This document shows, piece by piece, positions 852 through 63,397 of a DNA stretch of 64,000 bases. Position 1 is the first letter of the stretch. Every line of letters begins with the position of its first letter. This DNA is from Phallusia mammillata (lineage: Eukaryota). Location: positions 4,464,001-4,528,000 of the forward strand of contig OZ281499.1 of assembly GCA_965637545.1 (NCBI GenBank). The letters run 5' to 3'. A program made the translations under genes and the position numbers. The notes below the pieces were generated by a model. It saw nothing but the letters and a program-made list of their open reading frames with translations, was not told where the DNA came from and searched no databases.

Positions 852-2080
852 ATGAGTTTGTCGTTTGAAAACGTGCTTGATTTGATGAACATAACCCTTA
901 AAGTTGGTGATCAAGATTCTGTAAGTCCAAAGAGATTTTCCGATTTTCAAGGAGCTTTTCGGGACGACCTCGAATCAAGAATTCTACACTATGCACAAAA
1001 AGGACAAACGTTTGCTTTTGATCATCTACAGTTTTACAAAATTGAGATTGGTGATTTAAAAGGCAAACAAGTTCTTCGAATGTTGATATCACTCACAAAC
1101 AACGAAGAGTTGATGAAACCTGGAAATTGTTTCGTGTTCCTTGTCAAAACCGAACCAGATACTTCACTGACTGTGCTTCATAAGTATTGTTTCCAAGCAC
1201 GAGGTGTTTCGGCTGAGTCTGGAGAAGAAAGAGGTTTGTTTGCAAGAGCATTTGATGACAAAACATGTTCCAAGCGTCAAAATAATCCCGAGTTTGTCAA
1301 CTACGATTCACAAACGCTTGAAAAATTTCGCTCCACATTATCTGAGCAATATGAAATATACATGAAAGAGAAAATTTTTAATTTGGAACCAAAATATCGT
1401 CGATTTTTTATTGGTGTTGTGTTCGAAATAGCCAAATGCCACGTGAGACATTGGAAAGTTTACAAACATTTAAAAAACTTTCCAACCTCTTCTCTAATCA
1501 AATTAGCACTTGATAATGAATGCAGTGGAAAGTTGCAGGCTGTTTTCAATGATCACAATTTGGATGAGGACATTGAAAATATTAAAAAACAGGCTGCCAA
1601 CAAAAGCTCAAGCCTAGATGAAGTTCACCAATACAAAGCAAATCTTCGTTTGAAGGGAGCTAAAACAATCATTGATCGGTGAGTAAACAGAATACCAACA
1701 GAAGTTTGTTTAAATATCTAGCTTCCATGTACTAAAAGGTAACGTCAATTAGAGTGTTTGTACATCCAGCACTACTGGCATTGTTTAAACAAAAGACTTT
1801 ATTACAAATGTATATGTGTTTACTTGTGATTATCAATTTGAAATAAGCCTTTTACTTTTCAAAAACAAACATTATACAAAAATCAATGAAATTTAGTTTG
1901 CGGTAAGTTCGCTCATGCAACAAACCGACGTAGACTTTAAAAGAAGCGAATATGCATAAACATGTTTAATTAAATTTCATTTTGTTTTGTCTCAGGATTT
2001 TTCCTCCCAATGCTAATGGAAAATATGATGGTGAAAAAGTGAAACAAGCAGCTGATGAGATAAGGAGATTTTATGAATGA
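852..2080 (+). CDS. Array copy 1, intact, tail A; exons 852-1678 + 1996-2080; 303 aa uncharacterised protein
   Basis: ORF 852-1682; donor CG|GTGAGT at 1679, acceptor CTCAG|G at 1995; splicing adds RIFPPNANGKYDGEKVKQAADEIRRFYE*. Confidence 0.9.
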
Positions 2081-2966
2081 AACATCAAATACGAACATTA
2101 TGATCGTTTTTTGTTTCTTTTTGTGTATATTGTAGAATAGAATCCTGTAGATCAGGTAATAGATGTTTACATTGCATTTAACAATGGCAGCTGAATTCTG
2201 TCTCTGTGTGTACAAATTGTAATTAATAAATTGTTCATTTTGTTACCAATGTGATGTATAAAAACATACTTTCTGTACCCAATTTAAGTTTTGCGAAATG
2301 TTTCTAATTGGTAGTGAAAACCTTTAAACGTTGATCAACAAATCATTTTCAGTATCACTAAATACAGCTATGAATATGGTGGTTGTGACCCACGACCATC
2401 AAAACAATACGGTCGCCATTTAAGACAGGACAGTTACGGTATTTGTTTGTGTGCTTAACCTCAGCACTTGTGGAGAAGGAACTCAGAAGGCAATAAATCA
2501 GGCGAATAGATTCGAAAAGTAATTGCAGTACCGAAATTCAAATGGTAGCAGAATGAGGTTGGAAACTTCCTTTTGTCAACATAAGTTGGTGATCAAGATA
2601 AAGTATACCAAACTATGTTGTGTCGATACAAATCGTTTTAATTTAACTGTTACTGCCATTATGCGTGTAGCGCAATTGGACCTGTACTGATCAAAAACAC
2701 TTGTAAGTTATATTCATAAGACCGATACAACCTTTGTTCGATTTTAACTTAAGCAACAGGGAGCACAGAGCCTACCCCTGTATGTTCAGTATTAAGAGGC
2801 AGATATTGGAAACAAGTACTTAAATAGAGTAAAAACATTAAAGTTGGTGATTACGATTTTGTAGATCTACAGAGATTTCCGGATTTTTTCAGAATGTTAT
2901 TCAAACGCCATTTTAATTCGTTCGTGTACCCGACTACAATCAATACACACCGTATCTATTTAATTT

Positions 2967-3180
2967 ATGACACAACGTTATTTGTGTTGGCCTGTGTGCT
3001 TAATCTTAGCACTTGTTGAAAGGGAACTCAATGTCATTTTGGAAAACCATCAGAATCAGTTGAATAAATTTCAAGCGTATACAAAGTACCAAAACTTGGA
3101 TACAGACAGAAACAGTCAGGTTCTCGACATAACTTTTGAAAACGTTTTGATTTGTTGATGATCAAGATTTTGTCTAAACA
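2967..3180 (+). pseudogene. Degenerate 5' relic of the family (sisters 29712-29942, 50054-50299)
   Basis: Matches conserved upstream block and runs into FENVL..(G)DQDF. Confidence 0.6.
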
Positions 3181-3795
3181 ATAGATTCTAGAATTTTCCT
3201 TTTACATTGCGAATGGATCATGGTCTTAAGTTTGCTTATATTTAAAAAAACTAAATTTTACAGCTTAAAACAGGTTCTTAAACATCCCAGCAGAAGATTT
3301 GGATCTGCAGAAATCGCAAATTATTTCAATTTGTCAGCAAACAAACCCGTTGAAGTTTAAATTAAATTACTGTTTTCTAACCAATGACCGATTAGTAGAC
3401 TTCAAAGGTTTTTTATGTAGTTTAGATATTTACCTAGTGTCACGTTGTTATAGCATAATTTGGAAACAAACGAATTAACTGAGGAAAAGGCCTCGAAGGA
3501 TAATATCGCGTGTTTTTGCACCCTGCAAAATACATAGGAGGCTGTAGCTTACGTAGTCTCTTAATTGCAATACAGGGCACTATATTTATGTTGTTCCATT
3601 ACAACGATATTGGCTATAGTGTATGTGAGTTAACGTTCAGCATAAATTGGCTCATACACTTTTATCGCACATGATTTGGATTTGGTTTATGTTTTAAGAT
3701 CGCTTTTATTCGATTACTCAAAGTTGTGGGTTGTCTGTAAAACATGATTGTTTAATTTATAACAGAAAATTACAGAAAAAAATCGAATTAACACC

Positions 3796-6312: not shown

Positions 6313-6379
6313 GGGAATTCCCCTTTAAGGTGAGAAAGGTTCTCTTGCGTTCCGCCGTTCACGCATCGTTGTGACGTCA
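6313..6379 (+). promoter_or_regulatory. kB palindrome + CRE module
   Basis: GGGAATTCCC 6313-6322; TGACGTCA 6372-6379. Confidence 0.55.
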
Positions 6380-6470
6380 CACTTACTGGACGTACTGCTG
6401 TGTGATGAAACCAAGCAACACAAATCCATGTATGGTAGTGTGTCGGTTTGTTGTGCATCACCCTCTACAC

Positions 6471-7642: not shown

Positions 7643-8632
7643 ATGAGCTTGTCGTTGGAAAACGTGCTTGATTTGTTGAACATATCAATTGAAGTTGGTG
7701 ATCAAGATTCTGTAAAGCCACAAAGATTTTCAGAATTTGAAGAAACATTTCGAGAGGATCTTAGGAGAAGAATTTCCTACTTACAAAGCAATGGAAGAAC
7801 GTTTTCATTCGAAAATTTACAATTTTACAAATTTAAGATCGGTGATCTGAAAGGAAAACAAGTTCTTCGAATGTTGATATCACTCACAAACAACGAAGAG
7901 TTGATGAAAGATGGAAATTGCTTCGTGTTTCTTGTCAACAACGAACCAGATATTTCACTGATTGTGCTTTACAGATATTGGATTGAACTACGAGGTACTT
8001 TGACTGAAACGGATAAAGAAAAAGGAAATTGGTTTAAAGCTTTTGATGACAAATTATGTCAGAAAAGGCAAAATAATCCACATTTTGTTGGTTTGGATGA
8101 CGAAACTATTAAAAGAGTTTCGTTCCACTTTGCCTGAGGAATATACAAAATATATGGAGCAAAAAATGGCCAATCTGCAACCAAAATATCGTCGATTGTT
8201 TTTTGGAATTGCATTCGAAATAGCAAAGTGTCACGTAAAAAGTTGGCTGGTTTATGAACACTTAAAAGACTTTCCTAGGTCGTCTCTCATTAGGTTGGCA
8301 ATTGATAATGGATGTAGTGGAAAGTTGCAGGCAGTTTTCAACAACCATTTTTTGGATGTTTCTTGCATTCATAAAAAAACTACACATAGAAATGAACAAA
8401 TTACCAAAAATTCAACAACAGAAAGCCGAATGGCGCAGAGAAGGAGCAAAAGAGATTATTGATTGGTGAGTCAAACTTTTATAAATAGCAAAAAAGTAAC
8501 ACCATCAAGAGCCTATAGTTTGTTTAAACTAGTTTTGTTTGTCATAGGATTTTCCCACCAAATGCCGAAGGTAAATACGATGGTGAAGAAGTGAAAAAGG
8601 CTGCTGACAAGATAAAGAGATTTTATAAATAG
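7643..8632 (+). pseudogene. Array copy 4, tail C, two +1 frameshifts in A-runs; last exon 8548-8632
   Basis: Extra A at ~8111-8114 and ~8406-8410; donor TG|GTGAGT 8466 and acceptor CATAG|G 8547 intact. Confidence 0.85.
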
Positions 8633-9988: not shown

Positions 9989-10945
9989 ATGAGTTTGTCG
10001 TTTGCAAACGTGCTTGATTTGTTAAACATAACAATTGAAGTTGGTGATCAAGATTTTGTAGATCCACAACTATATTTCGAATTTCAAGGAGATTTTAGAG
10101 AATATCTTTAGGGAAGAGTTCCGTATTTTCAAAGCGAGGAAAGAGAGATTTCTTTTAAAAATTTACAATTTTATAAAATTGGCGTTGATCATCTGACCGG
10201 AAAACAAGTTCTTCGAATGTTGATATCACTTACAAACAACGAAAAGTTGATGAAAGATGGAAATTGCTTTGTGTTTCTTACCAACAACGAACCAGATATT
10301 TCACTGATTGTGCTTTACAGATATTGGATTGAAATACGAACCGTTTTGGCTAAATCGAATGAAGATAAAGGAAATTGGCCGAAAGCTTTTGATGACAAAA
10401 CATGTCAGGAGAGGCAAAATGACCCTCGTTATATTGGTTTAAACTACCAAACTATCAAAGAGTTTCGTTCCACTTTGCCTGAGGAATATACAAAATACAT
10501 GGAGCATAACATGGCTGATCTGCAACCAAAATATCGTCGATTGTTTTTTGGAATTGTATTCGAAATAGCAAAGTCTCACGTGAAAAATTGGTTGGTCTGT
10601 GAACACTTGCAAGACTTTCCTAGGTCGTCTCTCATTAAGTTGGCGATTGATAATGGATGTAGTGGAAAACTGCAGGCGGTTTTTAACCACTATTTTTGAG
10701 ATATAACTTTTATTTATGAAGAAACTACCGATAGACAGGAACAAGTTGCCAAAATCGAACAACAGAAAACCGAATGACGCAGAGAAGGAGCAAAGGAGAT
10801 TATTGATGGGTAAGTCTTTTATGTGCACCAAAATGTTGCTAACACCAATAGCCTGTTATTTCTGTAAACTCGTTTTGTCTGTCATCGAAATTTTCGGAAA
10901 ATACGATGGTGAAGAAGTGAAAAAAGCTGCTGACAAGATTCACTT
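9989..10945 (+). pseudogene. Array copy 5, tail C, three in-frame stops, damaged last exon
   Basis: ATG 9989 MSLSFANV; TAG 10109-10111, TGA 10697-10699, further TGA ~10775; donor 10810; acceptor and start of last exon corrupted. Confidence 0.85.
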
Positions 10946-12017
10946 TGCGTCTTTGTTTATTTCATTATGTGCTATTTTGTTTAATTGCTGGTTCTAGATC
11001 TTTTGTGCATGTGCGTGCGTAAATACATGAAATCTGTATTGTAAATAGACATTATTTGAAATGCAAGCAAAACACGTCTTCGTGTGACATAAAATGTTGC
11101 GTAAATCTCTGCTGAGAAGACCGATTGCAGAAAGAAAATTGAGATTTGTGATTGAAGCAACAACAAATTAAGACAAGGAAGTGACGCAACAAGGTCGCAG
11201 TCTCAAACAAATAACTACGGAAACAAATAACTAAGAAAAAAATCTCGCGTCAAAACCCTGGCTTTCATTTTAACCAAAAGGAACAAAAATTCAGTAAGAG
11301 TCAGGTTTTTATGCGGTTGGGTTGTCACGCACGATTGTGAAGTCATGTATACCAGAGTCACTGGTGTGTGGCGTCATGTATACTAGAGTGACTTGCATGA
11401 TTAACCCCTGTTACACAGGACCCATATGAATTTTTTTCAGCATGACTAATATTAACAATACGCCGCTATATATAAAATGGTGTTTGTGCCTCAAGACCAA
11501 CAATGCCAGTATTTGAGATAAGAAAGTTACGGTATTGGTTTGTGTGCTTAAAATTGACAGCTGTGGAGAAGCTAGTCATTGTAATTGTGAGAAAGCAATA
11601 AATCAGTTGAGTAAATTCGAAATCTATTTACGATACCAAAATTCGAAAAACAGACAAAAGAGTTAAGTTTGCAGAATGAGTCGTTTGAAAACGTGCCTGC
11701 TTTGTTTACCATAACCATTGAAGTTGGGGATCAAGTTAAAGTATGCAGCATAATATTGTAATGCCAAGACTCTGTTGTGTCTATACAAACTGTTAGTTCA
11801 ACTGTTCTGTCGATATGCGTGTCGCGTAATTGGACCTGCACTTATTGAAAACACTTGTAAGTGTGTTTGGGTTTATTGGACCGATACAGCTTTTGTTCGA
11901 TTTTAACTTAAGCATCAGGGAGCACAACGTTTCTGCTCCTGTTAGTTGAGTATTATTCCTGAAGTGGACAGTGCAAAACTATATCTAAAATAAAGAGAAA
12001 ACATTCAAAGTTGCGGA

Positions 12018-12838
12018 ATGAATTTGTCGTTTGAAAACGTGCTTGATTTATTAAACATAACCCTTGAAGTTGGTGATCACGATTCTGTAGATTCAAAGAG
12101 ATTTTCCGATTTTCAAGGATTATTCCGAGAAGACCTCGAATCAAGAATTCCACGCCTTCCAAACGCAGGACAAATGTTTTCATTTTCAAGTCTTCAATAT
12201 TACAAAATTGAGATTGGTGATTATAACGGAAAACGAGTTCTTCGAATGTTAATATCACTTACAAACAACGAAGAGTTGATGAAAGATGGAAATTGCTACG
12301 TGTTTCTGGTTAACAACGAACCAGATTCTTCACTGACTGTGCTTCTCAGTTATTGTTTCGAAGCACGAGGTGCATTGGGTGAATCGGGAGAAGAAAGAGG
12401 TTTGTTTGCTAGAGCATTTGATGACAAAAGGTGTTCCCAGCGTCAAATGTATCCAAACTTTGTCGGCTACGATTCACAAACACTTGAAAAATTTCGCTCC
12501 ATATTATCTGAGCAATATGAGATGTACATGAAACAGAAGATGTCCAATTTGAAACCAAAATATCGTCGATTGTTTTTTGGGGTTGTGGTCGAAATAGCAA
12601 AATGTCACGTGAGACATTGGAAAGTTCACACACATTTAAAAAACTTTCCAACCTCTTCTCTTGTCAAATTAGCACTCGACAATGGATGTAGTGGAAAGTT
12701 GCAAGCGGTTTTTAACGACCACAATTTGGATATTTCATCCATTATGAGACAAACAAGGGATAGAGAAGAACAAATTGCGAAAGTCCACAAAGAAAAAGCC
12801 AGATTACGTTTAGAGGGGGCAAAGATCATCATTGACTA
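12018..12838 (+). CDS. Array copy 6, tail D; stop codon formed at the splice junction (273 aa); last exon 12922-13006 would be untranslated
   Basis: Exon ends GAC TA|GTAAGT; acceptor CACAG|G supplies G, giving TAG whether spliced or not. Confidence 0.75.
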
Positions 12839-13361
12839 GTAAGTTAAAGAATTAGACGGGCACAATAAGTGAACCAAATCACATCGAGTATGGTGTGTCT
12901 AAACTTTTCTGTTTAACACAGGATTTTTCCACCGAATGCCGAAGGAAATTATGATAGTGAAAAAGTGAGACAAGTCGCTGATGACATGAAGAAATTTTAT
13001 GAATGAGATATCAAATATTGTACGAACATTTTGTGCTATTAAAGATTACGCTTCAGTTAAATTCTTCCTCTCATTTCGAATTATAGCTAATGAATTATGT
13101 TGTAACTCTCTATATATTATAATGTTGGTGTAGAATTGTGTGTGTAAATACGACACATTTATACTGTAAATAAATGTAACGCTTTTGTAGCAAATAAAAC
13201 ATATTTTCATAGGATTAAAATGTCTTTGTTGAGAGCCAAAGCGATAAAGGGCAATTTGGTAGGGATCCAAACAGTAAAATTCGAAAACTTGCACCAGTTT
13301 CAGATCAAATGCCCTCACAAATATTGTCTCGCATCGAGTATTACTCAACCGTCGCACGAAA

Positions 13362-15363: not shown

Positions 15364-16481
15364 ATGAGTTCGTCGTTTGAAAACGTGCTTGATTTATTAA
15401 ATTTCACTATTGAAGTTGGAGATCGAGATCCTGTGGATCCACAAAGATTTTCAGATTTTGAAGGAAGGTTTCGTGACGAACTGGAAAAAAGATTCAAATC
15501 ATTTCAAGATGAAGGAGCAACATTTTCTTTTTCACATTTTCAATATTACAAGATTCAGATTGACAATCTCAATGGAAAACAAGTTCTTCGAATGTTGATA
15601 TCACTCACAAACAACGAAATTTGGATGCAAGATGGAAATTGCTTTGTGTTTCTTGTCAACAACGAACCAGATACTTCACTGACTGTGCTTCGCAGTTATT
15701 GTTGGTTTGAACCTAGAAGTGTTTTGGCTAAGTCTGGAGAAGAAAAAGGAAGACACGCAAGAGCATTTGATGACAAAACATGTTACAAGCGCCAAAAGAA
15801 CCCTGAGTTTGTCGGCTACGATTCACAAACACTTGAAAAGTTTCGCTCCACATTATCTGAGCAATATGAGATATACATGAAAAAGAAGATGGCCAGTTTG
15901 GAACCAAAATATCGTCGATTGTTTTGCGGAGTTGTGTTCGAGATAGCAAAGTGTCACGTGAGACATTGGAAAGTTCACAAACATTTAAAACACTTCCCAA
16001 CAGCCTCCCTTGTCAATTTGGCACTTGATAATGGGTGTAGTGGAAAGCTGCAAGCGGTTTTTAACGAACATAATATCATGAAAGATTTGTTTAAAGAAAT
16101 CAGCAAACAGCTGAGTGAAGAAGAAAGACTTTCTATCTACCATGCTCGTAAAGATGAACTACGAAAAGAAGGAGCAAAGTTAATTATTGACAAGTAAGTT
16201 TTCTGCCTTCTGTTTGAACTAGTCACCATTAGTGAAATGCTAGCTATGCAAATCGGATGTAACAGCATAAAAGCAACTGGCACACACAATGGGTCCAAAA
16301 ATGGCTTTAAACGTACCTTTTTTCATTTTTTTGTTTCTATATTATTAACACGAGACACATTGTTTTCGCAAACACAAATTCCTTTTCTCATTTCAGAATT
16401 TTCCCACCAACCGCTGAAGGAAAGTATGATCAAACTGAAATAACAAAAGTTGCTGATGAGATGAAATCATTTTACTTGTAA
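15364..16481 (+). CDS. Array copy 7, intact, MSSSF-type head, tail B; exons 15364-16193 + 16397-16481; 304 aa
   Basis: Donor 16194 GTAAGT, acceptor TTTCAG 16396; last exon IFPPTAEGKYDQTEITKVADEMKSFYL*. Confidence 0.9.
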
Positions 16482-20370: not shown

Positions 20371-21461
20371 ATGAGTTCGGCGTTTGAAAACGTGCTTGAT
20401 TTATTAAATTTCACTGTTGAAGTTGGTGATCGAGATTCTGTGGATCCACAAAGATTTTCAGGCTTTGAAGGAAGGTTTCGTGACGAACTGGAAAAAAGAT
20501 TTAAATTATTTCAAGATAAAGGAGCAACATTTTCTTTTTCACATTTTCAATATTACAAGATTCAGATTGACGATCTCAATGGCAAAGTTCTTCGAATGTT
20601 GATATCACTTACAAACAACGAAATTTGGATGCAAGATGGAAATTGTTTCGTGTTTCTTGTCAACAACGAACCAGATCTTTCACTGACTGTGTTTTACTGG
20701 TATTGCTGGTGTGAACCTGGAAGTGTTTTGGCTATATCTGGAGAAGAAAAAGGAAGACACGCAAGAGCATTTGATGACAAAACATGTTACAAGCGCCAAA
20801 AGGTACCTGACTTTGACGGCTACGATTCACAAACACTTGAAAAATTTCGCTCCACATTACCTGAGCAATATGATATATACATGAAACAGAAGATGTCCAA
20901 TTTGGAACCAAAGTATCGTCGGTTGTTTTTTGGAATTGTGTTCGAAATAGCAAAGTGTCACGCGAGACATTGGAAAGTTCACAAACATTAGCAATTGATA
21001 ATGGATGTAGTGGAAAGTTGCAAACAGTTTTTAATGATCACAACTTGCAGGAGGACATTGAAAATATTAAAAAACAGGCTGCCAACAAAAGCTCAAGCGT
21101 AGATGAAGTTCACCAATACAAAGCAGGCCTTCGTTTGAAAGGAGCTAAAGTAATTATTGATCTGTAAGTAAACAGAATACCACAAGAAGTTTGTTTGAAT
21201 GTTGTTTATCTGTTTGTTTGTGTTTATCATTTTAAAACATGACTTTCAGACAGAACTTTAAGTAAATAATTTGTATCAGTTTGATTTAAGTTCGCTCATA
21301 AAATAAACCGACGTAAACTTGTAATGAAGCTAATATGCATCAACATGTTTAAACAAAGTTTTTATTTTTATCTCAGGATTTTTCCTCCCAATGCTGAAGG
21401 AAAATATGACGGTGAAAAAGTGAAACAAGCAGCTGATGAGATAAAGAGATTTTATGAATGA
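20371..21461 (+). pseudogene. Array copy 9, MSSAF head, tail A, ~34-bp frameshifting deletion; last exon 21377-21461
   Basis: ORF stops at KH* 20991; tail continues in another frame (20955-21167); splice sites intact. Confidence 0.85.
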
Positions 21462-22780: not shown

Positions 22781-23735
22781 ATGAGCTTGTCATTTGAAAA
22801 CGTGCTTGCTTTATTAAACATAACCATTGAAGTTGGTGACTTAGAATCTGTAGATCCACAAAGATTTTCTGAATTTGAAAGAACTTTTCGATACGATCTT
22901 AGGAGAATAATTTCCTACTTTCAAAGCAATGGAAGAATGTTTTCATTTGAAAATCTGCAATTTTACAAATTTAAGATTGGTGATCTTAATGGAAAACAAG
23001 TCCTTCGAATGTTGATATCAATTATAAACAACGAAGAGTTGATAAAAGATGGAAATTGTTTCGTGATTCTTACCAACAACGAAACAAAAATTTCACTGAT
23101 TGTGCTTTACAGATATTGGATTGAACTTTACAGATATTGGATTGTCTAAATCAGATAAAGAAAAGGGAAATTGGTTTAAAGCTTTTGATGACAAATTATT
23201 ACAGGAAAGACAAAATAACCCTCGTTCTTATTGGGTGGGATAAACAAACTATCAAAGAGTTTCGTTACACTTTGCCCGAGCAATATTCAAAATAGATGGA
23301 GCAAAAACATGGCCGATCTGCAACCAAAATATCGTCGATTGTTTTTTTTGCATTACATTGGAAGTAAAAAAGGATCACGTGCAACATTGGCTGGTCTACG
23401 AACACCTAAAAGACTTTCCTAGGTCGTCTCTCATTAAGTTAGCAATTGATAATGGATGTAGTGGAAAACTGCAGGCGGTTTTTAACCACTATTTTTGGGA
23501 TATTACTTTTATTTATGAAGAAACTACCGATAGACAGGAACAAGTTACCAAAATCGAACAACAGAAAACCGAATGGCGCAGAGAAATAGCAAAGGACATT
23601 ATTGATGGGTAAGTCTTTTATGTGCACCAAAATGTTGCTAACACCAATAGCCTGTTATTTCTGTAAACTCGTTTTGTCTGTCATCGAAATTTTTCGAAAA
23701 TACGATGGTGAAGAAGTGAAAAAAGCTGCTGACAA
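22781..23735 (+). pseudogene. Array copy 10, tail C, multiple lesions
   Basis: Internal repeat ctttacagatattggattg (~23105-23145), frameshifts, TAG; damaged last exon identical in form to copy 5. Confidence 0.85.
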
Positions 23736-24760
23736 TATTCACTTTGCGTCTTTGTTTATTTCATTATGTGCTATTTTGTTTAATTGCTGGTTCTAGATCT
23801 TTTGTGCATGTGCGTGCGTAAATACATGAAACCTGTATTGTAAATAGACATTATTTGAAATGCAAGCAAAACACGTCTTCGTGTGAAATAAAATGTTGCG
23901 TAAATCTGTGCTGGAAAGACCGATTGCAGAAAGAAAATAGAGGTTTGTGATTGAAGCAACAACAAATTAAGACAAAGAAGTGACGCAACAAGGTCGCAGT
24001 CTCAAACAAATAACTACGGAAACAAATAACTAAGAAAAAAATCTCGCGTCAAAACCCTGGCTTCCATTTTAACCAAAAGGAACAAAAATTCAGTAAGAGT
24101 CAGGTTTTTATGCGGTTGGGTTGTGACGCACCACTGTGACATCATGCATACCAGAGTCACTTGCAAGATTAAACCCCTGTTACACAGGACCCATATGAAT
24201 TTTTTTCAGCATGACTAATATCAACAATACGCCGCTATAAAATGGTGTTTGTGCCTGTGTTAAGACCAACAATGCCAGTATTTGAGACACGAAAGTTACG
24301 GTATTGGTTTGCGTTAACCTTACCACCTGTGGAGAAAGAACTCATTGTGAGAAGGCAATAAATCAGTTGAATAAATTCGAAATCTATTTACAATACCAAA
24401 ATTCGAAAAACAGACAAAAGTGTTAAGTTTGCAGAATGAGTCGTTTGAAAACGTGCCTGCTTTGTTTACCATACCCATTGAAGTTGGGGATCAAGATAAA
24501 GTATGCAGCATAATATTATAATGCAAAAACTCTGTTGTGTCTATACAAACTGTTAGTTCAACTGTTCTATCGATATGCGTGTCGCGTAATTGGACCTGCA
24601 CTTATTGAAAACACTTGTAAGGGTGTTTGGGTTAATTGGACCGATACAGCTTTTGTTTGATTTTAACTTAAGCATCAGGGAGCACAACTGTATGTTCAGC
24701 ATTAATCTTAGGGTAGACAAACTAAAACTAAAATACAGAGAAAACATTCAAAGTTGCAAA

Positions 24761-25757
24761 ATGAGTTTATCGTTTGAAAACGTGCTTGCTTTGTTGACCA
24801 TAACCCTTGAAGTTGGTGATCAAGATTCTGTAGATCCAAAGAGGTTTTCCGATTTTCAAGGACCTTTTCGGGACGACATCGAATCAAGAATTCCACACTA
24901 TGCAAATAACGGACAAACGTTTGCTTTTAATAATCTAGATTTTTACAAAATTGAGATTGGTGATTTGAATGGAATACAAGTTCTTCGAATGTTGATATCA
25001 CTCACAAACGACAAAGATTTGATGAAACCTGGAAAATGCTTCGTGTTTCTTTTCAAAAACAAACCAGATACTTCACTGACTATGCTTCAAAGTTATTGGT
25101 TCGAAGTACGAGGCATTCCAGCTGAGTCGGGACACGAAAGAGGTTTGTTTGTAAGAGCATTCGATGACAAAACGTGTTCCAATCGTCAAAAGAACCCTAA
25201 ATTTGTCGGTTTCGATTCAAAAACCCTTGAAAAACTTCGCTCCACATTATCTGAGCAATATCAGATATACATACAACAGAAGATGGTCAATTTAGAACCA
25301 AAATATCGTCGATTGTTTTTTGGAGTTGTGTTCGAAATAGCCAAATGTCACGTGATCAACTGGAAAGTACACAAATATTTGAAAAACTTTCCAACGGCTT
25401 CTCTGATCAAATTAGCACTCGATAATGGATGCAGTGGAAAGGTAAAAGCGGTTTGTAACGATCGCAATTTGGATATTTCGTCTGGATATTTCAATTTGAG
25501 TCAAACAAGTAGTAAAGAAAAACATGTTGCGGAAGTCCACAGCATAAAAGCCAGACTACGTTCGGAGGGGGCAAAGGTCATCATTGACAAGTAAGTTAAA
25601 GAATTTAAAGGGCACAGTGGTGAAACAAATCACATTAAGTTTGGTTTGTCTAAGCATTTCTGTTTATTACACGATTTTTCCACCGAGTGCTAAAGAAAAA
25701 TATAATGCTGAAAAAGTGAGACAAGCAGTTGATGAGATAAAGAAATTTTATGAATGA
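24761..25757 (+). CDS. Array copy 11, tail D'; exon 24761-25590 open, last-exon acceptor mutated AG>AC
   Basis: ttattacac|gatttttcc at 25672 versus ttatcacag|gatttttcc; unspliced product 277 aa; in-frame cryptic acceptor TAAG at 25654. Confidence 0.7.
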
Positions 25758-27591: not shown

Positions 27592-28816
27592 ATGAGTTTA
27601 TCGTTTGAAAACGTGCTTGCCTTGTTAAACTTAACCTTTGAAGTTGGTGTTCAAGATTCTGTGGATCCAAAGAGGTTTTCAAATTTTCAAGGATTATTCC
27701 GAGAAGACCTCGAATCCAGAATTCTATGCCTTCAAAACGAAGAACAAATGTTTTCATTTGAAAAACTAGAATTTTACAAAATTGAGATTGGTGCTCGAAA
27801 CGGAAAACAAGTTCTTCGAATGTTGATATCACTCACAAACAACAAAGAATTGATGAAACCTGGGAATTGTTTCGTGTTTCTTGTCAACAACGAACCAGAC
27901 AATTCACTGACTGTGCTGCAAAGTTATTGTTTCGAAGCACGAGGTGTGCCGGCTGAATCTGGAGAAGAAAGAGGTTTGTTTGCAAGAGCGTTTGATGACA
28001 AAACGTGTTTTAAGCGTCAAAAGAACCCTGAGTTTGTCGGGTACGATTCAAAAACGCTTGAAAAATTTCGTTTCACTTTATCTGAGCAATATGAGATATA
28101 CATGCAACAGAAGATGACCAATTTGGAACCAAAATATCGTCGATTGTTTTGGGGAGTTTTGTTCGACATAGCCAAATGTCACGTGATCAGCTGGAAAGTA
28201 CACAAATATATAAAAAACTTTCCAAAAGCCTCCTTTGTCAAATTAGCAATTGATAATGGATGTAGTGGAAAGTTGCAGGCGGTTTTTAACGACCACAATT
28301 TGAATGAGGACATTGAAAATATAAAAAAACAGGCTGCCAACAAAAGCTCAAGCCTAGATGAAGTTCACCAATACAAAGCAGATCTTCGTTTGAAGGGAGC
28401 TAAAACAATTATTGATCGGTGAGTAAACAGAATACCAACGTTTGTTTGAATATCTAGCTTCCATGTACTAAAAGATAACATCAATCAGAGTGTTTGTACA
28501 TCCATAACTACTGGCATTGTTCAAACAAATGGCTTGATTACAAATGTATGTGTGTTTATTTGTGATTATCAATTTGAAATAAGCCTTTTACTTTTCAAAA
28601 ACAAAAATTATACAAAAATCAATGAAATTTAGTTTGCGGTAAGTTCGCTCATGCAACAAACCGACGTAGACTTTTAATGAAGCGAATATGCATAAACATG
28701 TTTATTTAAATTTCAGTTTGTTTTATCTCAGGATTTTTCCTCCCAATGCTGAAGGAAAATATGATGGTGAAAAAGTGAAACAAGCAGCTGATGAGTTGAA
28801 CAAATTTTATGAATGA
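27592..28816 (+). CDS. Array copy 12, intact, tail A; exons 27592-28418 + 28732-28816; 303 aa
   Basis: Donor CG|GTGAGT 28419, acceptor CTCAG 28731; last exon open. Confidence 0.9.
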
Positions 28817-37278: not shown

Positions 37279-38275
37279 ATGAGTTTGTCGCTTCAAAACG
37301 TGCTTGATTTGTTAAACATATCAATTGAAGTTGGTGATAAAGATTCTGTAAATCCACAAAGATTTTCAGATTTTCATGGCACATTTCGAGACCACCTTAA
37401 CAAAAGAGTGGCATACTTTGAAAGTGAAGGAAACACATTTCTATTTGACGATCTTCAATTTTACAAAATGGAGACTGGTAATATGAATGGAAAACAAGTT
37501 CTTCGAATGTTGATATCACTCACAAACAATATAACTTGGATGCAAGATGGAAATTGCTTTGTGTTTCTTGTCAACAACGAAGCAGACACCTCTTTAACAG
37601 TGTTACGCAGGCACTGGTTCGAATTAATCGCCGTTTTGTTTAATTTGAAACAAGAAAGGGGCAAAGGTGAGAGCGTTTGATCACAAAACATGCGAGAAAC
37701 GGCAAATAAACCCTCAAAAATATGTCGGGTTAGATTCACAAACGATCAACATATTTCGCTCCAAATTATCTCAGCAATATGAGATGTACATGAACCAGAA
37801 GATGGCCAACCTGCAGCCTAATTATCGTCGATTGTTTTGGGGCGTTGTGTTCAAAATAGCGAAGTGTCACGTGACCCACTGGAAAGTTTACAAATATTTA
37901 AAAAACTTTCCAACCGCTTCTCTTATCAAATTAGCACTTGATAATGGATGCAGTGGAAACTTGCAGGCGACTTTTAACGAATACAATTTGGATATTTCGT
38001 CGAAGACGAGTCAAACAAGTAGTAAAGAAAAACATGTTGCGGAAGTCCACAGCATAAAAGCCAGACTACGTTCGGAGGGGGCAAAGGTCATCATTGACAA
38101 GTAAGTTAAAGAATAAGAAGGGCACAATAGTTAAAACAAATCACATTGAGTATGGTTTGTCTAAACGCTAAACTTTTCTGTTTATCACAGGATTTTTCCA
38201 CCGAATGCTGAAGGAAATTATGATGGTGAAAAAGTGAGACAAGTCACTGATGAGATGAAGAAATTTTATGAATGA
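37279..38275 (+). pseudogene. Array copy 16, tail D', single 2-bp frameshift (~37665); last exon 38191-38275
   Basis: ggggcaaaggtgagag versus ggggcaattgggtgagag in sister copy 8; splice sites intact. Confidence 0.8.
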
Positions 38276-39913: not shown

Positions 39914-41132
39914 ATGAGTTCGTCGTTTGAAAACGTGCTTGATTTACTAAACTTCACTGTTGGAGTTGGTGATCAAGATTTTGTGGTTCCACAAAAATTT
40001 TTAGATTTTGAAGGAAGGTTTCGTGACGAACTGGAAAAAAGATTTCAATCATTTCAAAATAAAGGAGAAAAATTTTCTTTTTCACATTTTCAATATTACA
40101 AGATTCAGATTGACAATCTCAATGGAAAACAAGTCCTTCGAATGTTGATATCACTTACAAACAACGAAGAGTTGATGAAAGATGGAAATTGTTTCGTGTT
40201 TCTTGTCAACAACAAACCAGATACTTCACTGACTGTGCTTCACAGTAATTGTTGGTGTGAAACGCGTAGTGCTTTGACTGAATCAAATGAAGATAAAGGA
40301 AGACATGCAAGAGCATTTGATGATAAAACATGTTTCAAGCGCCAAAAGAACCCTGAGTTTGTCAGCTACGGTTCACAAACACTTGAAAAATTTCGCTCCA
40401 CATTACCTGAGCAATATGAGATATACATGAAGCAGACGATGTCCAATTTGAAACCAAAGTATCGTCGGTTGTTTTTTGGAATTGTATTCGAAATAGCAAA
40501 GTGTCACGTGATCAACTGGAAAGTACACAAATATTTAAAAACCTTTCCAACCTCTTCTCTTATCAAGTTAGCACTTGATAATGGATGCAGTGGAAAGTTG
40601 CAAGCGATTTTTAATGACCACAATTTCGATATTTCCTCCATTATGAGACAAACAAGGGATAGAGAAGAACAAATTGAGAGAGTCCATAGCGAAAAAAACA
40701 GACTACGTTTGGAGGGGGCAAAGGTCATCATTGACAAGTAAGATAAAGCAGTGGTCAGCAAGCTCCGGGACGCGGCCGGTGCCGGTCCGCGAGGAGTTTG
40801 TTACCATACTTTTTTATGTTATATCTTACATTTTTAAACATTTTGCCCATACATCCCGGGGATGATAAACTAATTTAAGCGTTTTCGTTGTTTGTAAAGG
40901 CCGGTCCGCGATAAAACTTCAGTTCCCCAAACGGTCTGCAGTACAATTATGGTTGTCGACCCCCGAGTTAAAGAGTTTGAAGGGAACGTTAGGCAAAATA
41001 AACCACATTGACAGTTTGGTTTGTCTAAACTTTTCTGTTTATCACAGGATTTTTGCACCCAACGCAGAAGGAAAGTATGATGGTGACAAAGTGAGACAAC
41101 TTGCTGACGCGATAAAGAAATTTTATGAATGA
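39914..41132 (+). CDS. Array copy 17, intact, MSSSF head, tail D; exons 39914-40737 + 41048-41132; 302 aa
   Basis: Donor GTAAGA 40738, acceptor CACAG 41047; MITE in intron. Confidence 0.85.
40749..40965. mobile_element. hAT-type MITE in the intron of copy 17
   Basis: Imperfect TIRs cagtggtcagcaa / ttgtcgacccccg; 8-bp TSD agataaag / agttaaag. Confidence 0.8.
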
Positions 41133-41860: not shown

Positions 41861-41930
41861 AATGTTATGCCTTCAAAGTTTTTATTTGGAAATAGATTTA
41901 TCTCACCAGATAGAAAATTTTCATTTAGAG

Positions 41931-51252: not shown

Positions 51253-52246
51253 ATGAGTTTGTCGTTTGAAAACGTGCTTGCCTTGTTAAACATAACACTT
51301 GAAGTTGGTGTTCAAGATTCTGTGGATCTAAAGAAGTTTTCAAATTTTCAAGGATTATTCCGAGAAGACCTCGAATCAAGAATTCCGTACTTTCAAAACG
51401 AAGGACAAATGTTTTCATTTGAAAAACTAGAATATTACAAAATTGAGATTGGTGATCGAAACGGAAAACAAGTTCTTCGAATGTTGATATCACTTACAAA
51501 CAACGAAGAGTTGATGAAAGATGGAAACTGTTTCGTGTTTCTTGTAAACAACGAACCAGATACTTCACTGACTGTGCTTCATAGGTATTGTTTCCAAGCA
51601 CGAGGTGTTTCGGCTGAATCTGGACACGAAAGAAGTTTGTTTGCAAGAGCATTTGATGACAAAACGTGTTTCAAGCGTCAAATGTACCCAAACTTTGTCG
51701 GCTACGATTCACAAACACTTGAAAAATTTCGCTCCACATTACCTGAGCAATATGAGATATACATGAAGCAGAGGATGATCGATTCGGGACCAAAATATCG
51801 TCGATTGTTTTTGGGAATTGTGTTCGAAATAGCAAAGTGTCATGTGAGGTTTTAGAAAGTTTACGAACATTTGAAACACTTTCCAACCGCTTCCCTTATC
51901 AAGTTAGCAATTGATAATGGATGTAGTGGAAAGTTGCAGACAGTTTTTAACGACCACAATTTGGATATTTCATCCATTATGAGACAACCAGGGAACAGAC
52001 AAGAACAAATTACAAACGTCCACAAAGAAAAAGCCAGATTACGTTTAGAGGGTGCAAAGATCATCATTGACATGTAAGTTAAATAATTTGAAGGGCACAA
52101 TAAGTGAAACAAATCACATTGACAGTTTAGTGTGTTAAAACTTTTCTGTTTGTAATCACAGGGTTTTTCTACCCAATGCTGAAGGAAAATATGATGGTAA
52201 AAAAGTGAGACAAGTTGCAGATGAGATAAAGAAATTTTATGAATGA
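51253..52246 (+). pseudogene. Array copy 20, tail D, nonsense TAG at 51853-51855 (Trp position); last exon 52162-52246
   Basis: ORFs 51253-51855 and 51871-52077 are in the same frame. Confidence 0.8.
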
Positions 52247-54047: not shown

Positions 54048-55352
54048 ATGAGTTTATCATTTGAAGAAGTCCTTGACCTGCTAAGCATCACTGTTGAAGT
54101 AGACGACAACGATTTTCCGAAAATTCAGGAGATGCCCAACTTTGAGGGACAATTTAGGCAGTTTCTGGAAGGAAAACTACAGCACTACCTAAAAAAAGGA
54201 AAAGTGACACAACTTTTCAATTTTGAATATTACAAAATTGAAATTGGCGAGTTAAACGGAAAACAAATTCTTCGAATGTTGATATCACTAACAAACAACG
54301 AGGAGTTGATGAAAGACGGAAATTGTTTCGTGTGCTGTGTAAACGATGTCGGAGAAAATTCAGTTATTGTATTCTCAAAATATTGCATTGAATCAAGAGG
54401 TGCCGTTGCAGAGAACGAAGAAGAGCGAGGAAACTGGTCTAAGGCATTTGATGAAAAAGCATGCATCCTACAACGCAGAAATCCAAGATATCTTGGTTTA
54501 GACAAACAAACAATCAAACAGTTTTGTTCAACTTTATCAAAGCAATACAACAGCTTTTTGTCAACAAAAATGGCGGATTTGCAACCACAATATCGTCGGT
54601 TGTTTTTCGGAGTTGTGTTCGAAATTGCAAAGTGCTATATCAGACATTGGGATGCTTACAAACATTTAAAAACCTTTCCAACTGCTTCTCTTATCAAGTT
54701 GGCAATTGATAATGGATGTAGTGGAAAGTTGCAGGCTGTTTTTAACGAACATGATATCATGAAAGATTTGTTTAAAGAAATCAGCAAACAGCTTAGTGAA
54801 GAAGAAAGACTTTCTGTCTACCATGCTCGTAAAGATGAACTACGAAAAGAAGGAGCAAAGTTAATTATTGACAAGTAAGTTTGTTACCTTCTGTTGCAAA
54901 AAGTCACAATTAGTAAAATGCTAACTCTGCAAATCGGCTGTAACAGCATAAAGGTAACTGACACACACGTTAGGTTAAAAAATGACGTTAGAATGTAGCA
55001 TTTTTTACATGAGACATATTGAGATTAGAGGCCCAATCATTTGTTATCGCGCGGTGTTTTCGTTGCGTTGTGACGTGCTTGCGGTTCCTTCCTTTTCCCT
55101 TTTTTTATCGTGCACTGTACTAGTCGCATTCAGTGTTATTTACCCTGATGAATACGACCTGTATAGGACGTCGAAACGTCGGAATAAAATTACATTTGCC
55201 AGAAGAGCTCTACAAACTTGATGAGACATATTGTTTTCGCAAACGAACATTTCCTTTCTCGTTTCAGAATTTTCCCACCAACTGCTGAAGGAAAGTACGA
55301 TAAAAGTAAAGTAACAAAAGTTGCTGATGAGATGAAATCATTTTACTTGTGA
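54048..55352 (+). CDS. Array copy 21, intact, most divergent head, tail B; exons 54048-54874 + 55268-55352; 303 aa
   Basis: Donor 54875, acceptor TTTCAG 55267; intron carries the hammerhead-bearing insertion. Confidence 0.88.
55022..55220 (+). mobile_element. 199-bp Penelope-like / retrozyme-like non-autonomous insertion with 13-bp TSD
   Basis: Flanked by atgagacatattg at 55009-55021 and 55221-55233; empty site present once in paralogous B introns (e.g. ~4765-4777); contains hammerhead core. Confidence 0.8.
55136..55187 (+). ncRNA. Minimal type I hammerhead ribozyme motif
   Basis: CTGATGA 55145-55151, stem II acg-a-cct/gtat/agg-a-cgt, GAAA 55173-55176, ACGT palindrome with GUC site ending 55180, stem I ttatt(ta)cc / ggaataa. 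Confidence 0.75.
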
Positions 55353-56375: not shown

Positions 56376-57492
56376 ATGAGTTTGTCGTTTCAAAACGTGC
56401 TTGATTTGTTAAACATAACAATTGAAGTTTGTGATCAAGATTCTATAGATCAACAAAGATTTTCAGATTTTAACGGAGCATTTCGAGAATATCTTAAGGA
56501 AAAAGTTTTGTACTTTCAAAACGAGGGAAGAAAGATTTCTTTTGAAAATTTACAATATTACAAAATTGAGATTGCTGATCTGAATGGAAAACAAGTTCTT
56601 CGAATGTTGATATCACTTTTAAACAACAAAGAGTTGATAAAAGATGAAAATTGCTTCGTGTTTCTTACCAACAACGAACCAGATACTGCAATGACTGTGC
56701 TTTGCAGATATTGGATTGAGCTACGAGGCACTTTGACTGAAACGGATAAAGAAAAAGGAAATTGGTTTAAAGCTTTTGATGACAAATTATGTCAGAAAAG
56801 GCAAAATAACCCACGTTATATTGGCTTGGATGACAAAACTATTAAAAAGCTTCGTTCCACTTTGCCAGAGGAATATATAAAATACATGGAGCAAAACATG
56901 GCCGATCTGCAACCGAAATATCGTCGATTGTTTTTTGGAATTGTATTCGAAATAGCAAAGTGTCACGTGAAAAATTGGCTGGTCTACGAACACTTAAAGG
57001 ACTTTCCTAGGTCGTCTCTAATTAAATTAGCGATTGATAATGGATGTAGTGGAAAGTTGCAGGCCGTGTTTAACGACCATGATATCATAAAAGGTTTGTT
57101 TAAAGAAATCAGTCAACAGCTTAGTGAAAAAGAAAGACTTTCTGTCTACCATGCTCGTAAAGATGAACTACGAAAACAAGGAGCAAAGTTAATTATTGAC
57201 AAGTAAGTTTGCTACCTTCTGTTGGAAAATGTCACCATTAGTAAAATGCTAGCAATGCAAATCGGGTGCAACGGCATAAAGGTAACTGGCGCACACGTTA
57301 AGTGCAAAAATGGCTTTAAAACGTACCTTTTTTTCATTGTTTTTTTAATATATTACCAACGTGAGACATATAGTTTTCGCCAAAGCAAATTCCCTTTCTC
57401 GTTTCAGAATTTTCCCACCAACTGCTGAAGGAAAGTACGATAAAAGTGAAATAACGAAAGTTGCTGATCAGATGAGATCATTTTACTTGTAA
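56376..57492 (+). CDS. Array copy 22, intact, tail B; exons 56376-57202 + 57408-57492; 303 aa
   Basis: Donor 57203, acceptor 57407. Confidence 0.9.
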
Positions 57493-60643: not shown

Positions 60644-60923
60644 GTTACAAGGGTCACAAATGCGATCATTTTCAGCATGACTGATGTTAACAGTGCGCAG
60701 CTGTATGCTTGGCATTTGTCCCTGACGATAACAAAAAACGACGTTGACGCTACGTGATGCGTGACGCGACAGTTTCGGTGTTGTTTTGTGCGCTTGAACC
60801 TTGGCACCTCTGGATATGGAACTCATTATAAATGTGAGGTATCATAAAAAATCACTTAAATAAATTCGAACTTTAAAGACAGTACAAACATTTGGAAACG
60901 GAGAAGAGAGTTAAGATTGCAGA

Positions 60924-62037
60924 ATGAGTTTGTCGTTTGAAAACGTGCTTGATTTATTAAACATAACCATTAAAGTTGGTGATCAAGATTCTGTCAGTCC
61001 ACAAAGATTTTCAGATTTTAAAGGAACATTTCGAGACCATCTTGAAAGAAGAATGTCGTACTTTCAAAGTCAGGGACGTACGTTTTCATTTGAAAACTTA
61101 CAATATTACAAAATTGGGATTGGTGATTTGAATGGAAAACAACTTTTTCGAATGTTGATATCACTCACAAACAACGAAGAGTTGATGAAACCTGGAAACT
61201 GCTTCGTGTTTCTTGTCAACAACGAACCAGATACTTCACTGACTGTGTTTCACAGTTATTGGTTTGAACCACGAGCTACTTCTGGATCGGATAATGATAG
61301 AGGAAATTGGACTCGAGCCTTTGATGACAAAACACGACAGGAGAGGCAGAAATATCCTTTTTCCTTTGGATATGACAACCAGGCCATCAAAGAGTTTCGC
61401 TCCACATTATCTGAGCAATATGTGAATTATATGAAGCAAAAAATTGCCAATATAAAACCAAAATATCGCCGGTTGTTTTTCGGAGTTGTGTTTGAAATTG
61501 CAAAGTGTCATGTGAGGTATTGGGAAGTTTACAAACATTTGAAAAACTTTCCAACGGCTTCCCTTATCAAATTGGCAATTGATAATGGATGTAGTGGAAA
61601 GTTGCAGGCCGTGTTTAACGACCATGATATCATAAAAGGTTTGTTTAAAGAAATCAGTCAACAGCTTAGTGAAAAAGAAAGACTTTCTGTCTACCATGCT
61701 CGTAAAGATGAACTACGAAAACAAGGAGCAAAGTTAATTATTGACAAGTAAGTTTGCTACCTTCTGTTGGAAAATGTCACCATTAGTAAAATGCTAGCAA
61801 TGCAAATCGGGTGCAACGGCATAAAGGTAACTGGCGCACACGTTAAGTGCAAAAATGGCTTTAAAACGTACCTTTTTTTCATTGTTTTTTTTATATATTA
61901 CCAACGTGAGACATATAGTTTTCGCAAAAGCAAATTCCCTTTCTCATTTCAGAATTTTCCCACCAACTGCTGAAGGAAAGTACGATAAAAGTGAAGTAAG
62001 GAAAGTTGCTGATCAGATGAGATCATTTTACGTGTAA
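60924..62037 (+). CDS. Array copy 24, intact, tail B; exons 60924-61747 + 61953-62037; 302 aa
   Basis: Donor 61748, acceptor 61952. Confidence 0.9.
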
Positions 62038-62734
62038 AAACTTTTGCAGAAAATGTCAAGAAGCCCGAGAACGTATATTGATCTTGTACGATTCATTTTG
62101 TTCTTAAATGAGGAAATCTGTAAATAAATAATGTATAGCAATTGTCAGTCTATTGGCGTCAAGCAAGTTACAATTGTCCAGAATTTCGACATAAAATCTG
62201 TGTTGAGTATTAATCCTAAACCGAAGAGATGTTACACAATATTTAGTTACAAAAACAGCCAAACCAAATTTGATGAACGTTAAGTTACGATTTTACCCTT
62301 TAATGATTTTATGGCATCAAAAAACATATAGTCCTAAAATGATATGCAACCATGTGAGAAAGTAATTCAAACAATTTATAAACGGTGAGCATTTCGCCAG
62401 TACGAGACGAACCAGAACATCAAGGGAATTCCCCCTTAACGTGAGAAAGGTTTTCTTGCGTTTTGTCGTTCACGCTTGGATGTGACGTCACACTTACCGG
62501 ACGCACTGCTGTGTGGCGACACCAAGCGACACAAACGTTTTTCACCCCATATAGTATGAATATTTAAGCAGAATATACATCACCGTATTTCACTTTACAT
62601 CACAATATCTTCAGTGAATGTACAATTTGTTTCACGATAGTCCGCTGTGTATGTACAATAGCAACTTATGCTAAGCCACATCGCTAGTTATTTTGGAAAT
62701 CATTGTGGCGATCGCATGGCATAAGTTTAAATCT

Positions 62735-63397
62735 GCTTTACGGATATTGGATTGAACTACGGACCGTTTTGGCTGTCGGATGAAGATAAGGGTAGTTGGC
62801 CAAGAGCTTTCGATGACAAAACATGCCAGGAGAAACTGAACGACTCACGTTACATTGGGTTGGATGACAAAACTATTAAAGAATTTCGTTCCACTTTGCC
62901 TGAGCAATAATCACAATACATGGAGAAAAACATGGCCGATCTGCAACCAAAATATCGTCGATTGTTTTTTGGAATTGCATTTGAAATAGCAAAGTGTCAC
63001 GTGAAAAGTTGGCTGGTCGACGAACACTTGAAAGACTTTCCTAGGTCGTCTCTAATTAAATTAGCGATTGATAACGGATGTAGTGGAAAGTTGCAGGCAG
63101 TTTTTAACCACCATTTTTTGGATATTACTTTTATTTATGAAGAAACTACCGATAGACAGGAACAAGTTACTAAAATTCAACAACAGAAAGCCGAATGGCG
63201 CAGAGAAGGAGCAAAAGAGATTATTGATTGGTAAGTCAAACTTTTACAAAAAGTAAAAATGTTATAAACACCAATGGTCTATTATTTCTGAAACTCGTTC
63301 TGTCTTTTATAGGATTTTTCCACCAAACGCTGAAGGTAAATACGATGGTGAAGAAGTGAAAAAGGCTGCAGACATGATAAAGAGATTTTATGAATAG
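62735..63397 (+). pseudogene. Array copy 25, tail C, 5'-deleted (first ~105 codons and proximal promoter) with internal TAA; last exon 63313-63397
   Basis: Promoter sequence tttaaatct joins directly to gctttacggatattgg (mid-exon); TAA at ~62907. Confidence 0.85.

What the first reader, a model, noticed from the sequence alone, without database searches (positions are those of the whole stretch)
852..63397. 25-copy tandem array of an unrecognised ~303-aa two-exon gene family
Seen: 25 same-strand paralogues at ~2.5 kb spacing, a hidden 85-nt last exon, and a status split of 11 intact, 3 splice-altered and 11 disrupted. Conserved blocks (LRMLISLTNN, AFDDKxC, KYRRLFxGxxFEIAKCHV, DNGCSGKLQ, GAKxIIDxIFPP) alternate with highly variable segments (about aa 28-60, 105-150 and 235-275). 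I cannot assign the protein to any family I know. Inference: birth-and-death evolution with localised hypervariability is typical of host-defence loci, so this may be an undescribed cytosolic immune receptor or effector family.
Basis: partly seen in the sequence, partly recalled or inferred. Interest (0 to 1): 0.85.

Follow-up and report, generated by a model that had tools for sequence, protein, structure and literature searches.

The report
Shuffled sea-squirt array, unmatched protein fold
This sea-squirt genome stretch holds 25 side-by-side copies of a gene for an undescribed soluble protein whose confidently predicted shape matched nothing in the structure libraries searched; the copies swap variable segments and share a conserved NF-kB-type DNA site, which hints at, but does not show, a defence role.

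Summary
In detail: 25 same-strand two-exon loci, 11 intact, 3 splice-altered, 11 disrupted. The family is not confined to this genome. A profile search found 33 distant relatives (15-30% identity). The named ones are 'uncharacterized' Ciona and Clavelina proteins that share the intron position and the C-terminal helix. An AlphaFold2 model of a Ciona member is confident (pLDDT 90.6, pTM 0.89) and has no match in PDB, viral or ESM Atlas libraries; the N-terminal lobe was only weakly tested alone. The 'hypervariability' is mosaic module shuffling, not detectable positive selection. Segment trees conflict strongly, dN/dS is below 1 in every segment, and the single-tree selection signal is reproduced by simulations with no selection. 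A perfect palindromic kB site plus CRE is the best-kept spacer sequence, which supports inducible defence or stress expression, but binding and induction are untested. Best reading (0.45): an NF-kB-inducible intracellular binding protein diversified by recombination. The scan noted this before on adjacent DNA: the upstream window lists 20+ probably identical-family copies and the same kB module.

The parts
852..2080 (+). copy 1, intact (exon 1 852-1678, exon 2 1996-2080), 303 aa
3796..4894 (+). copy 2, intact (exon 2 from 4810), 303 aa
5462..6135 (+). copy 3, disrupted: frameshift near aa 40, 3' end and exon 2 missing
6313..6380 (+). example of the spacer module: palindromic kB site, AP-1-like box, CRE 57 nt downstream. 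Perfect kB sites also at 9793, 13362, 16883, 21763, 33911, 41495, 46404, 52618, 55721, 57896, 62424
7643..8632 (+). copy 4, disrupted: frameshifts near aa 158 and in the C-terminal module
9989..10960 (+). copy 5, disrupted: three in-frame stops, exon 2 start eroded (3' end approximate)
12018..13006 (+). copy 6, splice-altered: the exon junction reads as a stop after aa 273
15364..16481 (+). copy 7, intact, 304 aa
17802..18781 (+). copy 8, splice-altered: donor lost; the unspliced frame runs 313 aa with a different C-terminus
20371..21461 (+). copy 9, disrupted: 34-nt deletion near aa 206
22781..23760 (+). copy 10, disrupted: several frameshifts, exon 2 start eroded (3' end approximate)
24761..25757 (+). 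copy 11, splice-altered: acceptor reads AC
27592..28816 (+). copy 12, intact, 303 aa
30277..31393 (+). copy 13, intact, 303 aa
32438..33606 (+). copy 14, intact, 304 aa
34387..35376 (+). copy 15, disrupted: frameshift near aa 146 and a later stop
37279..38275 (+). copy 16, disrupted: frameshift near aa 128
39914..41132 (+). copy 17, intact, 302 aa
45126..46109 (+). copy 18, intact, 299 aa
47926..49155 (+). copy 19, disrupted: frameshift near aa 244
51253..52246 (+). copy 20, disrupted: single stop at codon 201
54048..55352 (+). copy 21, intact, 303 aa; most divergent N-terminal half joined to a C-terminal module 98% identical to copy 7's
56376..57492 (+). copy 22, intact, 303 aa
58523..59511 (+). 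copy 23, disrupted: single stop at codon 93
60924..62037 (+). copy 24, intact, 302 aa
62734..63397 (+). copy 25, disrupted: 5' third missing, internal stop

Best explanation
An ascidian host gene family encodes a soluble, about 300-aa intracellular protein with a two-part fold: an N-terminal alpha/beta part and a helical part closed by the exon-2 helix. In this species one lineage expanded into a large tandem array. Unequal crossing-over and gene conversion, mostly within the conserved block at aa 179-234, recombine older N-terminal variants with five C-terminal module types (aa 237-268), while purifying selection keeps the core (shown). A kB+CRE module in the spacers makes copies inducible through NF-kB and stress signalling (inferred from sequence conservation). 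The proteins most likely act as non-enzymatic binding effectors, sensors or decoys in cell-internal defence, and the variable segments would set partner specificity (inferred; no binding partner known).
For: Family, intron and fold. A spliced full-length cDNA-like contig of a relative exists. No signal peptide or membrane helix. Mosaicism: neighbour-incompatibility test p=0.0005; AU tests reject N-terminal trees for the C-terminal segments by 130-340 lnL units; 10 distinct module combinations among 11 intact copies. Twelve perfect kB palindromes; the kB and CRE 10-mers are the most widely shared exact 10-mers among 25 flanks and cross 4-5 otherwise dissimilar flank lineages. The same palindrome is a standard NF-kB EMSA probe (PMC8677719), and predicted kB sites went with LPS induction of Ciona peptide genes (PMC7387483). 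No invariant His/Cys/Ser/Asp catalytic set across 30 diverse members. One Clavelina copy sits beside a SAMHD1-like gene and the Ciona pair beside a fibrinogen-C gene (weak).
Against: No positively selected sites after correcting for recombination, unlike many pathogen-facing receptors. No transcript of a window copy was seen: one 211-nt contig at about 92% identity in a run only guessed to be RNA. kB-like sites near homologues in other species are scattered at roughly chance frequency and lack the adjacent CRE. The module sits 300-400 nt after the preceding gene and at a variable distance from the next start, and it is missing from about 11 spacers. Copies of the module are not independent events. 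Orphan tandem arrays are common in this genome.
Confidence: 0.45

Rival explanations
1. A stress- or xenobiotic-inducible enzyme or small-ligand-binding protein with a new or highly diverged fold; the paralogues broaden substrate range rather than recognise pathogens.
For: A few polar residues are near-invariant across 15-30% identity: K/R129, D132 and R158 (Ciona numbering), plus two helix N-cap motifs (TG at 69-70, SGK at 226-228) of a kind that can bind phosphate (inference). One ESM Atlas row is a small GNAT domain (TM 0.53 by the 118-aa target, 0.25 by query). NF-kB and CRE sites also drive stress genes.
Against: No GNAT in the top VIA rows; the GNAT motif-A glycines are not conserved; no invariant catalytic triad; several family-conserved polar positions are changed in the window clade.
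Confidence: 0.22
2. A recombination-prone array of largely redundant copies with an ordinary cellular role; copy number and mosaic pattern are by-products of unequal crossing-over under relaxed constraint, and only dosage matters.
For: 14 of 25 loci are damaged. About 32% of codons fit omega=1 and none fit above 1. dS rises with dN in the variable segments. The aa 237-268 module is shortened or missing in many distant homologues. One subfamily is dead in all its copies.
Against: Core codons are under strong purifying selection (68% at omega 0.19). Five distinct C-terminal types persist, one of them intact in 6 of 6 copies. The kB module is kept across diverged flanks.
Confidence: 0.2
3. A reproductive or allorecognition protein family (gamete or somatic self/non-self interactions).
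For: Ascidian self-sterility and fusion loci are highly diverse and lineage-restricted (own knowledge). Expression was not assessed.
Against: No signal peptide or membrane helix, and no site-level positive selection.
Confidence: 0.08
4. A gene captured from a virus, transposon or bacterium and then amplified.
For: Compact, nearly intronless gene with narrow taxonomic range.
Against: The same phase-2 intron occurs in Ciona, Clavelina and six metagenome-derived loci. No hit in viral contigs, prokaryote genomes, PHROGs, PADLOC or BFVD. No inverted copies or element ends define the unit.
Confidence: 0.05

Closest known systems
Uncharacterized ascidian proteins: Ciona intestinalis XP_002129972, XP_009860047, XP_018669229; Clavelina lepadiformis XP_076809964, XP_076819564, XP_076820825, CAK8695974
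   Same: True homologues (profile E from 1.8e-28): same length, same intron, same C-terminal helix; tandem pairs in both genera.
   Different: About 21-30% identity. Only pairs or dispersed copies were seen in the 20-kb loci fetched, not a 25+ array. No name, domain or paper.
C. elegans pals genes (intracellular pathogen response; PMC6347328)
   Same: Works-like analogy: a lineage-expanded family of unknown biochemical function (39 genes, 25 induced by intracellular infection).
   Different: No sequence relationship (no Pfam hit for any member). Induction is shown for pals genes and untested here.
Sea-urchin SpTransformer (Sp185/333) genes (own knowledge)
   Same: Two-exon clustered genes with mosaic segments, diversified by recombination and conversion.
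   Different: Those have a leader peptide, are largely disordered and are strongly infection-induced; this protein has no leader and a well-folded globular model.
Plant NLR clusters and fish NLR/finTRIM/GIMAP arrays (own knowledge)
   Same: Tandem birth-and-death, chimeric paralogues, many pseudogenes.
   Different: No NACHT/NB-ARC, LRR, B30.2, TIR, death-fold or GTPase domain, and no positive selection at sites.
GNAT acetyltransferase fold
   Same: A strand-helix-three-strand-helix order in residues about 58-140; one weak ESM Atlas row.
   Different: No motif-A glycines, no strands after the central helix, no Foldseek or VIA support.

Membership tests
Known Pfam/NCBIfam/PDB protein family | Significant profile match | tested here: not met
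   best E-values 0.002-0.08, in at most 3 of 85 members, none consistent.
Known fold in PDB, BFVD or ESM Atlas | Whole-protein structural match (TM >0.5 or Z well above background) | tested here: not met
Known fold in PDB, BFVD or ESM Atlas | Match of the N-terminal alpha/beta part folded on its own | not testable with these tools
A sequence profile of that part alone found nothing.
GNAT acetyltransferases | Motif A loop R/Q-x-x-G-x-G/A before the central helix | tested here: not met
   Alignment A4 and conservation table: no conserved glycines there.
GNAT acetyltransferases | Two further strands after the central helix forming the V-shaped CoA cleft | tested here: not met
   The model is helical from residue 128 apart from a short hairpin near 280-287.
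NLR / STAND, TRIM, GIMAP, cGAS-like immune receptors | P-loop NTPase, LRR, B30.2, death-fold, TIR or nucleotidyltransferase domain | tested here: not met
   No such Pfam or fold match; the CD-NTase rows have TM 0.13 and rmsd 20.
Diversified host-defence multigene family (functional class) | Tandem birth-and-death with pseudogenes and chimeric paralogues | tested here: met
Diversified host-defence multigene family (functional class) | Positively selected sites in variable regions | tested here: not met
   Partitioned M1a/M2a 2dlnL 0, M7/M8 p=0.53; power 14/14 and single-tree false positives 12/14 in simulation. Branch-site (episodic) selection not tested.
Diversified host-defence multigene family (functional class) | Conserved immune transcription-factor sites | tested here: inconclusive
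   The kB+CRE footprint is real within the array but not seen near homologues; binding untested.
Diversified host-defence multigene family (functional class) | Induction by infection or microbial patterns | not testable with these tools
   No challenge RNA data; searches show DNA holders only.
SpTransformer (Sp185/333) | Signal peptide and disordered Gly/His-rich mature protein | tested here: not met
Transposon- or virus-encoded gene | Element ends, mobile-element domain or viral homologue | tested here: not met
   intron conserved across genera.

The most novel reading that the evidence does not exclude
An ascidian-specific class of NF-kB-inducible intracellular immune sensor or effector built on a protein fold not yet in the PDB, whose repertoire is generated combinatorially by recombining N-terminal variants with five C-terminal modules in an array of 45 or more loci.
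Probability: 0.25. Interest if true: 0.85.

Novelty: new variant of a known kind. Interest (0 to 1): 0.6.

Why it matters
Ascidians are the closest invertebrate relatives of vertebrates, and their intracellular defence toolkit is poorly known. A family kept across Ciona, Clavelina and this species, with a high-confidence model that matched no searched structure, is a ready target for structure determination whatever its function. The array gives directly testable handles: a single conserved kB/CRE module for reporter tests, five exchangeable C-terminal modules for partner mapping, and low-copy homologues in the model species Ciona. It is also a clean example of a naive site-model test giving a false 'arms race' signal in a recombining array.

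Tried and rejected
Word-indexed protein searches found no new relative; only the full HMMER scan did. One of its 34 hits, P0032, is a repetitive spurious ORF. ESM Atlas feature searches were blank. The first fold, from 14 window copies, was unusable (pLDDT 37). Weak sequence rows were rejected as noise: glucan phosphorylase (E 0.017-0.3), Unr cold-shock domain (0.08), vaccinia K1L ankyrin repeat (0.06). Weak fold rows were rejected too: CD-NTase, DEAH helicase, bunyavirus nucleoproteins, I7L protease. Single-tree positive selection (2dlnL 25.2) was rejected as an artefact. IRF/ISRE, heat-shock and metal-response motifs showed no recurrent site. The AG just before many start codons is not a conserved acceptor. 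No Rfam family was found. Accession searches in papers were blank. The host species of the metagenome contigs could not be confirmed. No splice joint was seen in laid contigs because the covering runs are DNA.
Full report
OBSERVATION. The window (about 35% GC, no N) carries 25 loci of one gene family, all on the + strand, from 852 to 63397, with a median spacing of 2,438 bp. Each complete locus has an exon 1 of about 827 nt, a phase-2 intron and an 85-nt coding exon 2. Eleven copies are open with GT..AG introns (1, 2, 7, 12, 13, 14, 17, 18, 21, 22, 24; 299-304 aa). Three are splice-altered: in copy 6 the junction reads as a stop, copy 8 has lost its donor, and copy 11 has an AC acceptor. Eleven are disrupted by stops, frameshifts or truncation. 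The open-frame copies are 50-80% identical as proteins. The longest repeat pairs are multi-gene blocks at 85-92% identity, for example 24717-30239 against 45079-50560, so the array grew by segmental duplication and is not a doubled haplotype. Short-read contigs from two DNA runs match unique stretches exactly, though one may be the assembly's own sample. An earlier scan note (s1-364012) lists 20+ copies of what is probably the same family in the upstream window; I could not read that DNA.

WHAT THE PROTEIN IS. Pfam, NCBIfam, PDB sequences, PHROGs, PADLOC and the ESM Atlas feature search gave nothing significant. A full HMMER scan of 1.84 billion representatives with the window profile gave 34 hits, 19 of them at E below 1e-10; one is spurious. 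The 27 that I aligned are 15-30% identical to copy 1. Thirty were looked up: every named one is an 'uncharacterized' protein of Ciona intestinalis or Clavelina lepadiformis, and the rest come from unnamed metagenome or sequencing-run contigs. The annotated Ciona and Clavelina genes have a phase-2 intron at the same position and a last exon encoding the same helix. Five of six metagenome-derived loci show a GT donor exactly at the end of the open frame and the sixth a few codons earlier; four show an exon-2-like peptide downstream. These are eukaryotic host DNA. One relative lies on a 1,193-nt contig with the exons joined, as in a cDNA, so the family is transcribed and spliced somewhere. The window copies form one clade on a long branch (quick tree), that is, a lineage-specific radiation. 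No named hit came from Stolidobranchia or from outside tunicates, but absence was not tested genome by genome. The source genome is most likely an ascidian (inference from homologues; other scan notes say the same).

HOW THE DIVERSITY ARISES. For this local analysis I joined the two exons of the intact copies inside a script; copies 6, 8 and 11 were joined at the homologous positions only to classify their splice changes and were left out of all tree and selection tests. No joined sequence went to a search or folding tool. Neighbouring informative sites are far more compatible than distant ones (0.377 against 0.534, p=0.0005). Trees from the N-terminal segments are rejected for aa 235-275 and for exon 2 by 200-340 lnL units, and the reverse holds too. 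Copies 22 and 24 are identical at aa 235-275 but 68% identical at aa 105-178; copy 21 has the most divergent N-half yet a C-module 98% identical to copy 7's. The aa 237-268 segment falls into five types, each shared by 3-6 loci, and the 11 intact copies show 10 different combinations of segment types. Per-segment omega is 0.19-0.51, and dS is two- to three-fold higher in the variable segments than at aa 61-104. A single-tree site model appears to show selection (2dlnL 25.2, omega 3.5 at 3.8% of sites), but with segment-specific trees the signal vanishes (M1a/M2a 0.0; M7/M8 p=0.53). Simulation settles which to trust: the partitioned test detected that level of selection in 14 of 14 runs, while data simulated without selection gave false positives on one tree in 12 of 14 runs, up to 25.6. 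These are my own implementations of the codon models, with few replicates. The variable segments are best read as older variants reshuffled between conserved blocks that conversion keeps similar. Balancing or episodic selection on whole modules is not excluded. One pattern is unexplained: C-module type 1 is intact in 6 of 6 loci, while the subfamily of copies 3, 4, 5, 10, 15, 23 and 25 is dead in all seven, by mostly different lesions.

REGULATION. A motif scan turned up a perfect palindromic kB site 12 times (0.01 expected in shuffles), usually 300-400 nt after a stop codon and followed 50-57 nt later by a CRE. Because the unit is duplicated, the count alone proves little. The fairer test is alignment-free: the kB and CRE 10-mers are the most widely shared exact 10-mers among the 25 flanks, and they cross 4-5 flank lineages that are otherwise dissimilar. 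In an alignment of 14 modules the two boxes are 95-96% conserved against 62% upstream, 72% between and 77% downstream (biased upward because I anchored on the kB site). The palindrome is a standard NF-kB binding probe (PMC8677719), and predicted kB sites accompanied LPS-inducible Ciona peptide genes (PMC7387483). Against this: homologous loci in other species show only scattered kB-like sites without the CRE, another scan note reports a CRE excess elsewhere in this genome (s1-355952, unchecked), about 11 spacers lack the module, and which gene it serves is unknown. Expression in this species is unshown: one 211-nt contig at about 92% identity in a run guessed to be RNA.

MECHANISM AND VERDICT. 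Shown: a real ascidian gene family, a conserved two-exon structure, a confident model without a match, purifying selection on the core, mosaic module shuffling, and a conserved kB+CRE footprint. Inferred: NF-kB-driven induction, a binding rather than catalytic role, and a place in intracellular defence (0.45). Rivals: an inducible enzyme or ligand-binding protein (0.22), a redundant drifting array (0.20), a reproductive or allorecognition role (0.08), a captured mobile gene (0.05). It works like lineage-expanded defence families such as the C. elegans pals genes (PMC6347328), but it is a member of no named family that I tested. The genomic kind, a recombining tandem array, is known and this genome has several orphan arrays; the protein family and probably its fold are undescribed. 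Interest 0.6.

Noticed in passing
window 55010-55233: An insertion of about 200 bp between 13-bp direct repeats in the intron of copy 21, with a CUGAUGA..GAAA core typical of a minimal hammerhead ribozyme. Rfam found nothing; folding z-score -2.3. Already noted as s1-369016.
   Followed up: partly
window near 134, 2431-2599, 2977-3158, 11525-11735, 14325, 24294-24497, 26637, 29167, 29722, 36706-36884, 44854, 46966, 49506, 50064: At least 14 extra relics of the upstream region and the first codons, without the rest of the gene; the array has had more births than the 25 counted loci.
   Followed up: partly
window 9542-9585 and 41777-41836: Orphan remnants of the intron end and exon 2.
   Followed up: no
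window copies 2, 7, 13, 21, 22, 24 against 3, 4, 5, 10, 15, 23, 25: One C-terminal module type is intact in all six loci, while another subfamily is dead in all seven by mostly independent lesions; unexplained.
   Followed up: partly
window about 6470-6790, 7050-7285, 41930-42080, 43735-44160: Short elements with terminal inverted ends, MITE-like, seen by eye in the spacers; 41900-44700 is the only long stretch without family repeats.
   Followed up: no
window 41680 and about 52800: A GTAAGT donor-like site about 185 nt after the kB site in two spacers; it might mark a non-coding first exon driven by the module.
   Followed up: no
L011/L012 15107-20525: The Clavelina homologue lies between a P450 gene and a SAMHD1-like HD-domain gene; this block occurs twice, about 257 kb apart, on the same chromosome.
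   Followed up: partly
L010 2838-7570 and 13632-14646: The Ciona pair lies next to a fibrinogen-C-domain gene, with an unannotated 124-aa gene and a further 5' fragment of the family between the two copies.
   Followed up: no
L013 17012-21072: An LTR retrotransposon (protease, RT, RNase H, integrase) downstream of the Clavelina pair.
   Followed up: no
protein aa about 213-233: The helix pair resembles a single ankyrin-type repeat (weak row to vaccinia K1L, E 0.06).
   Followed up: no
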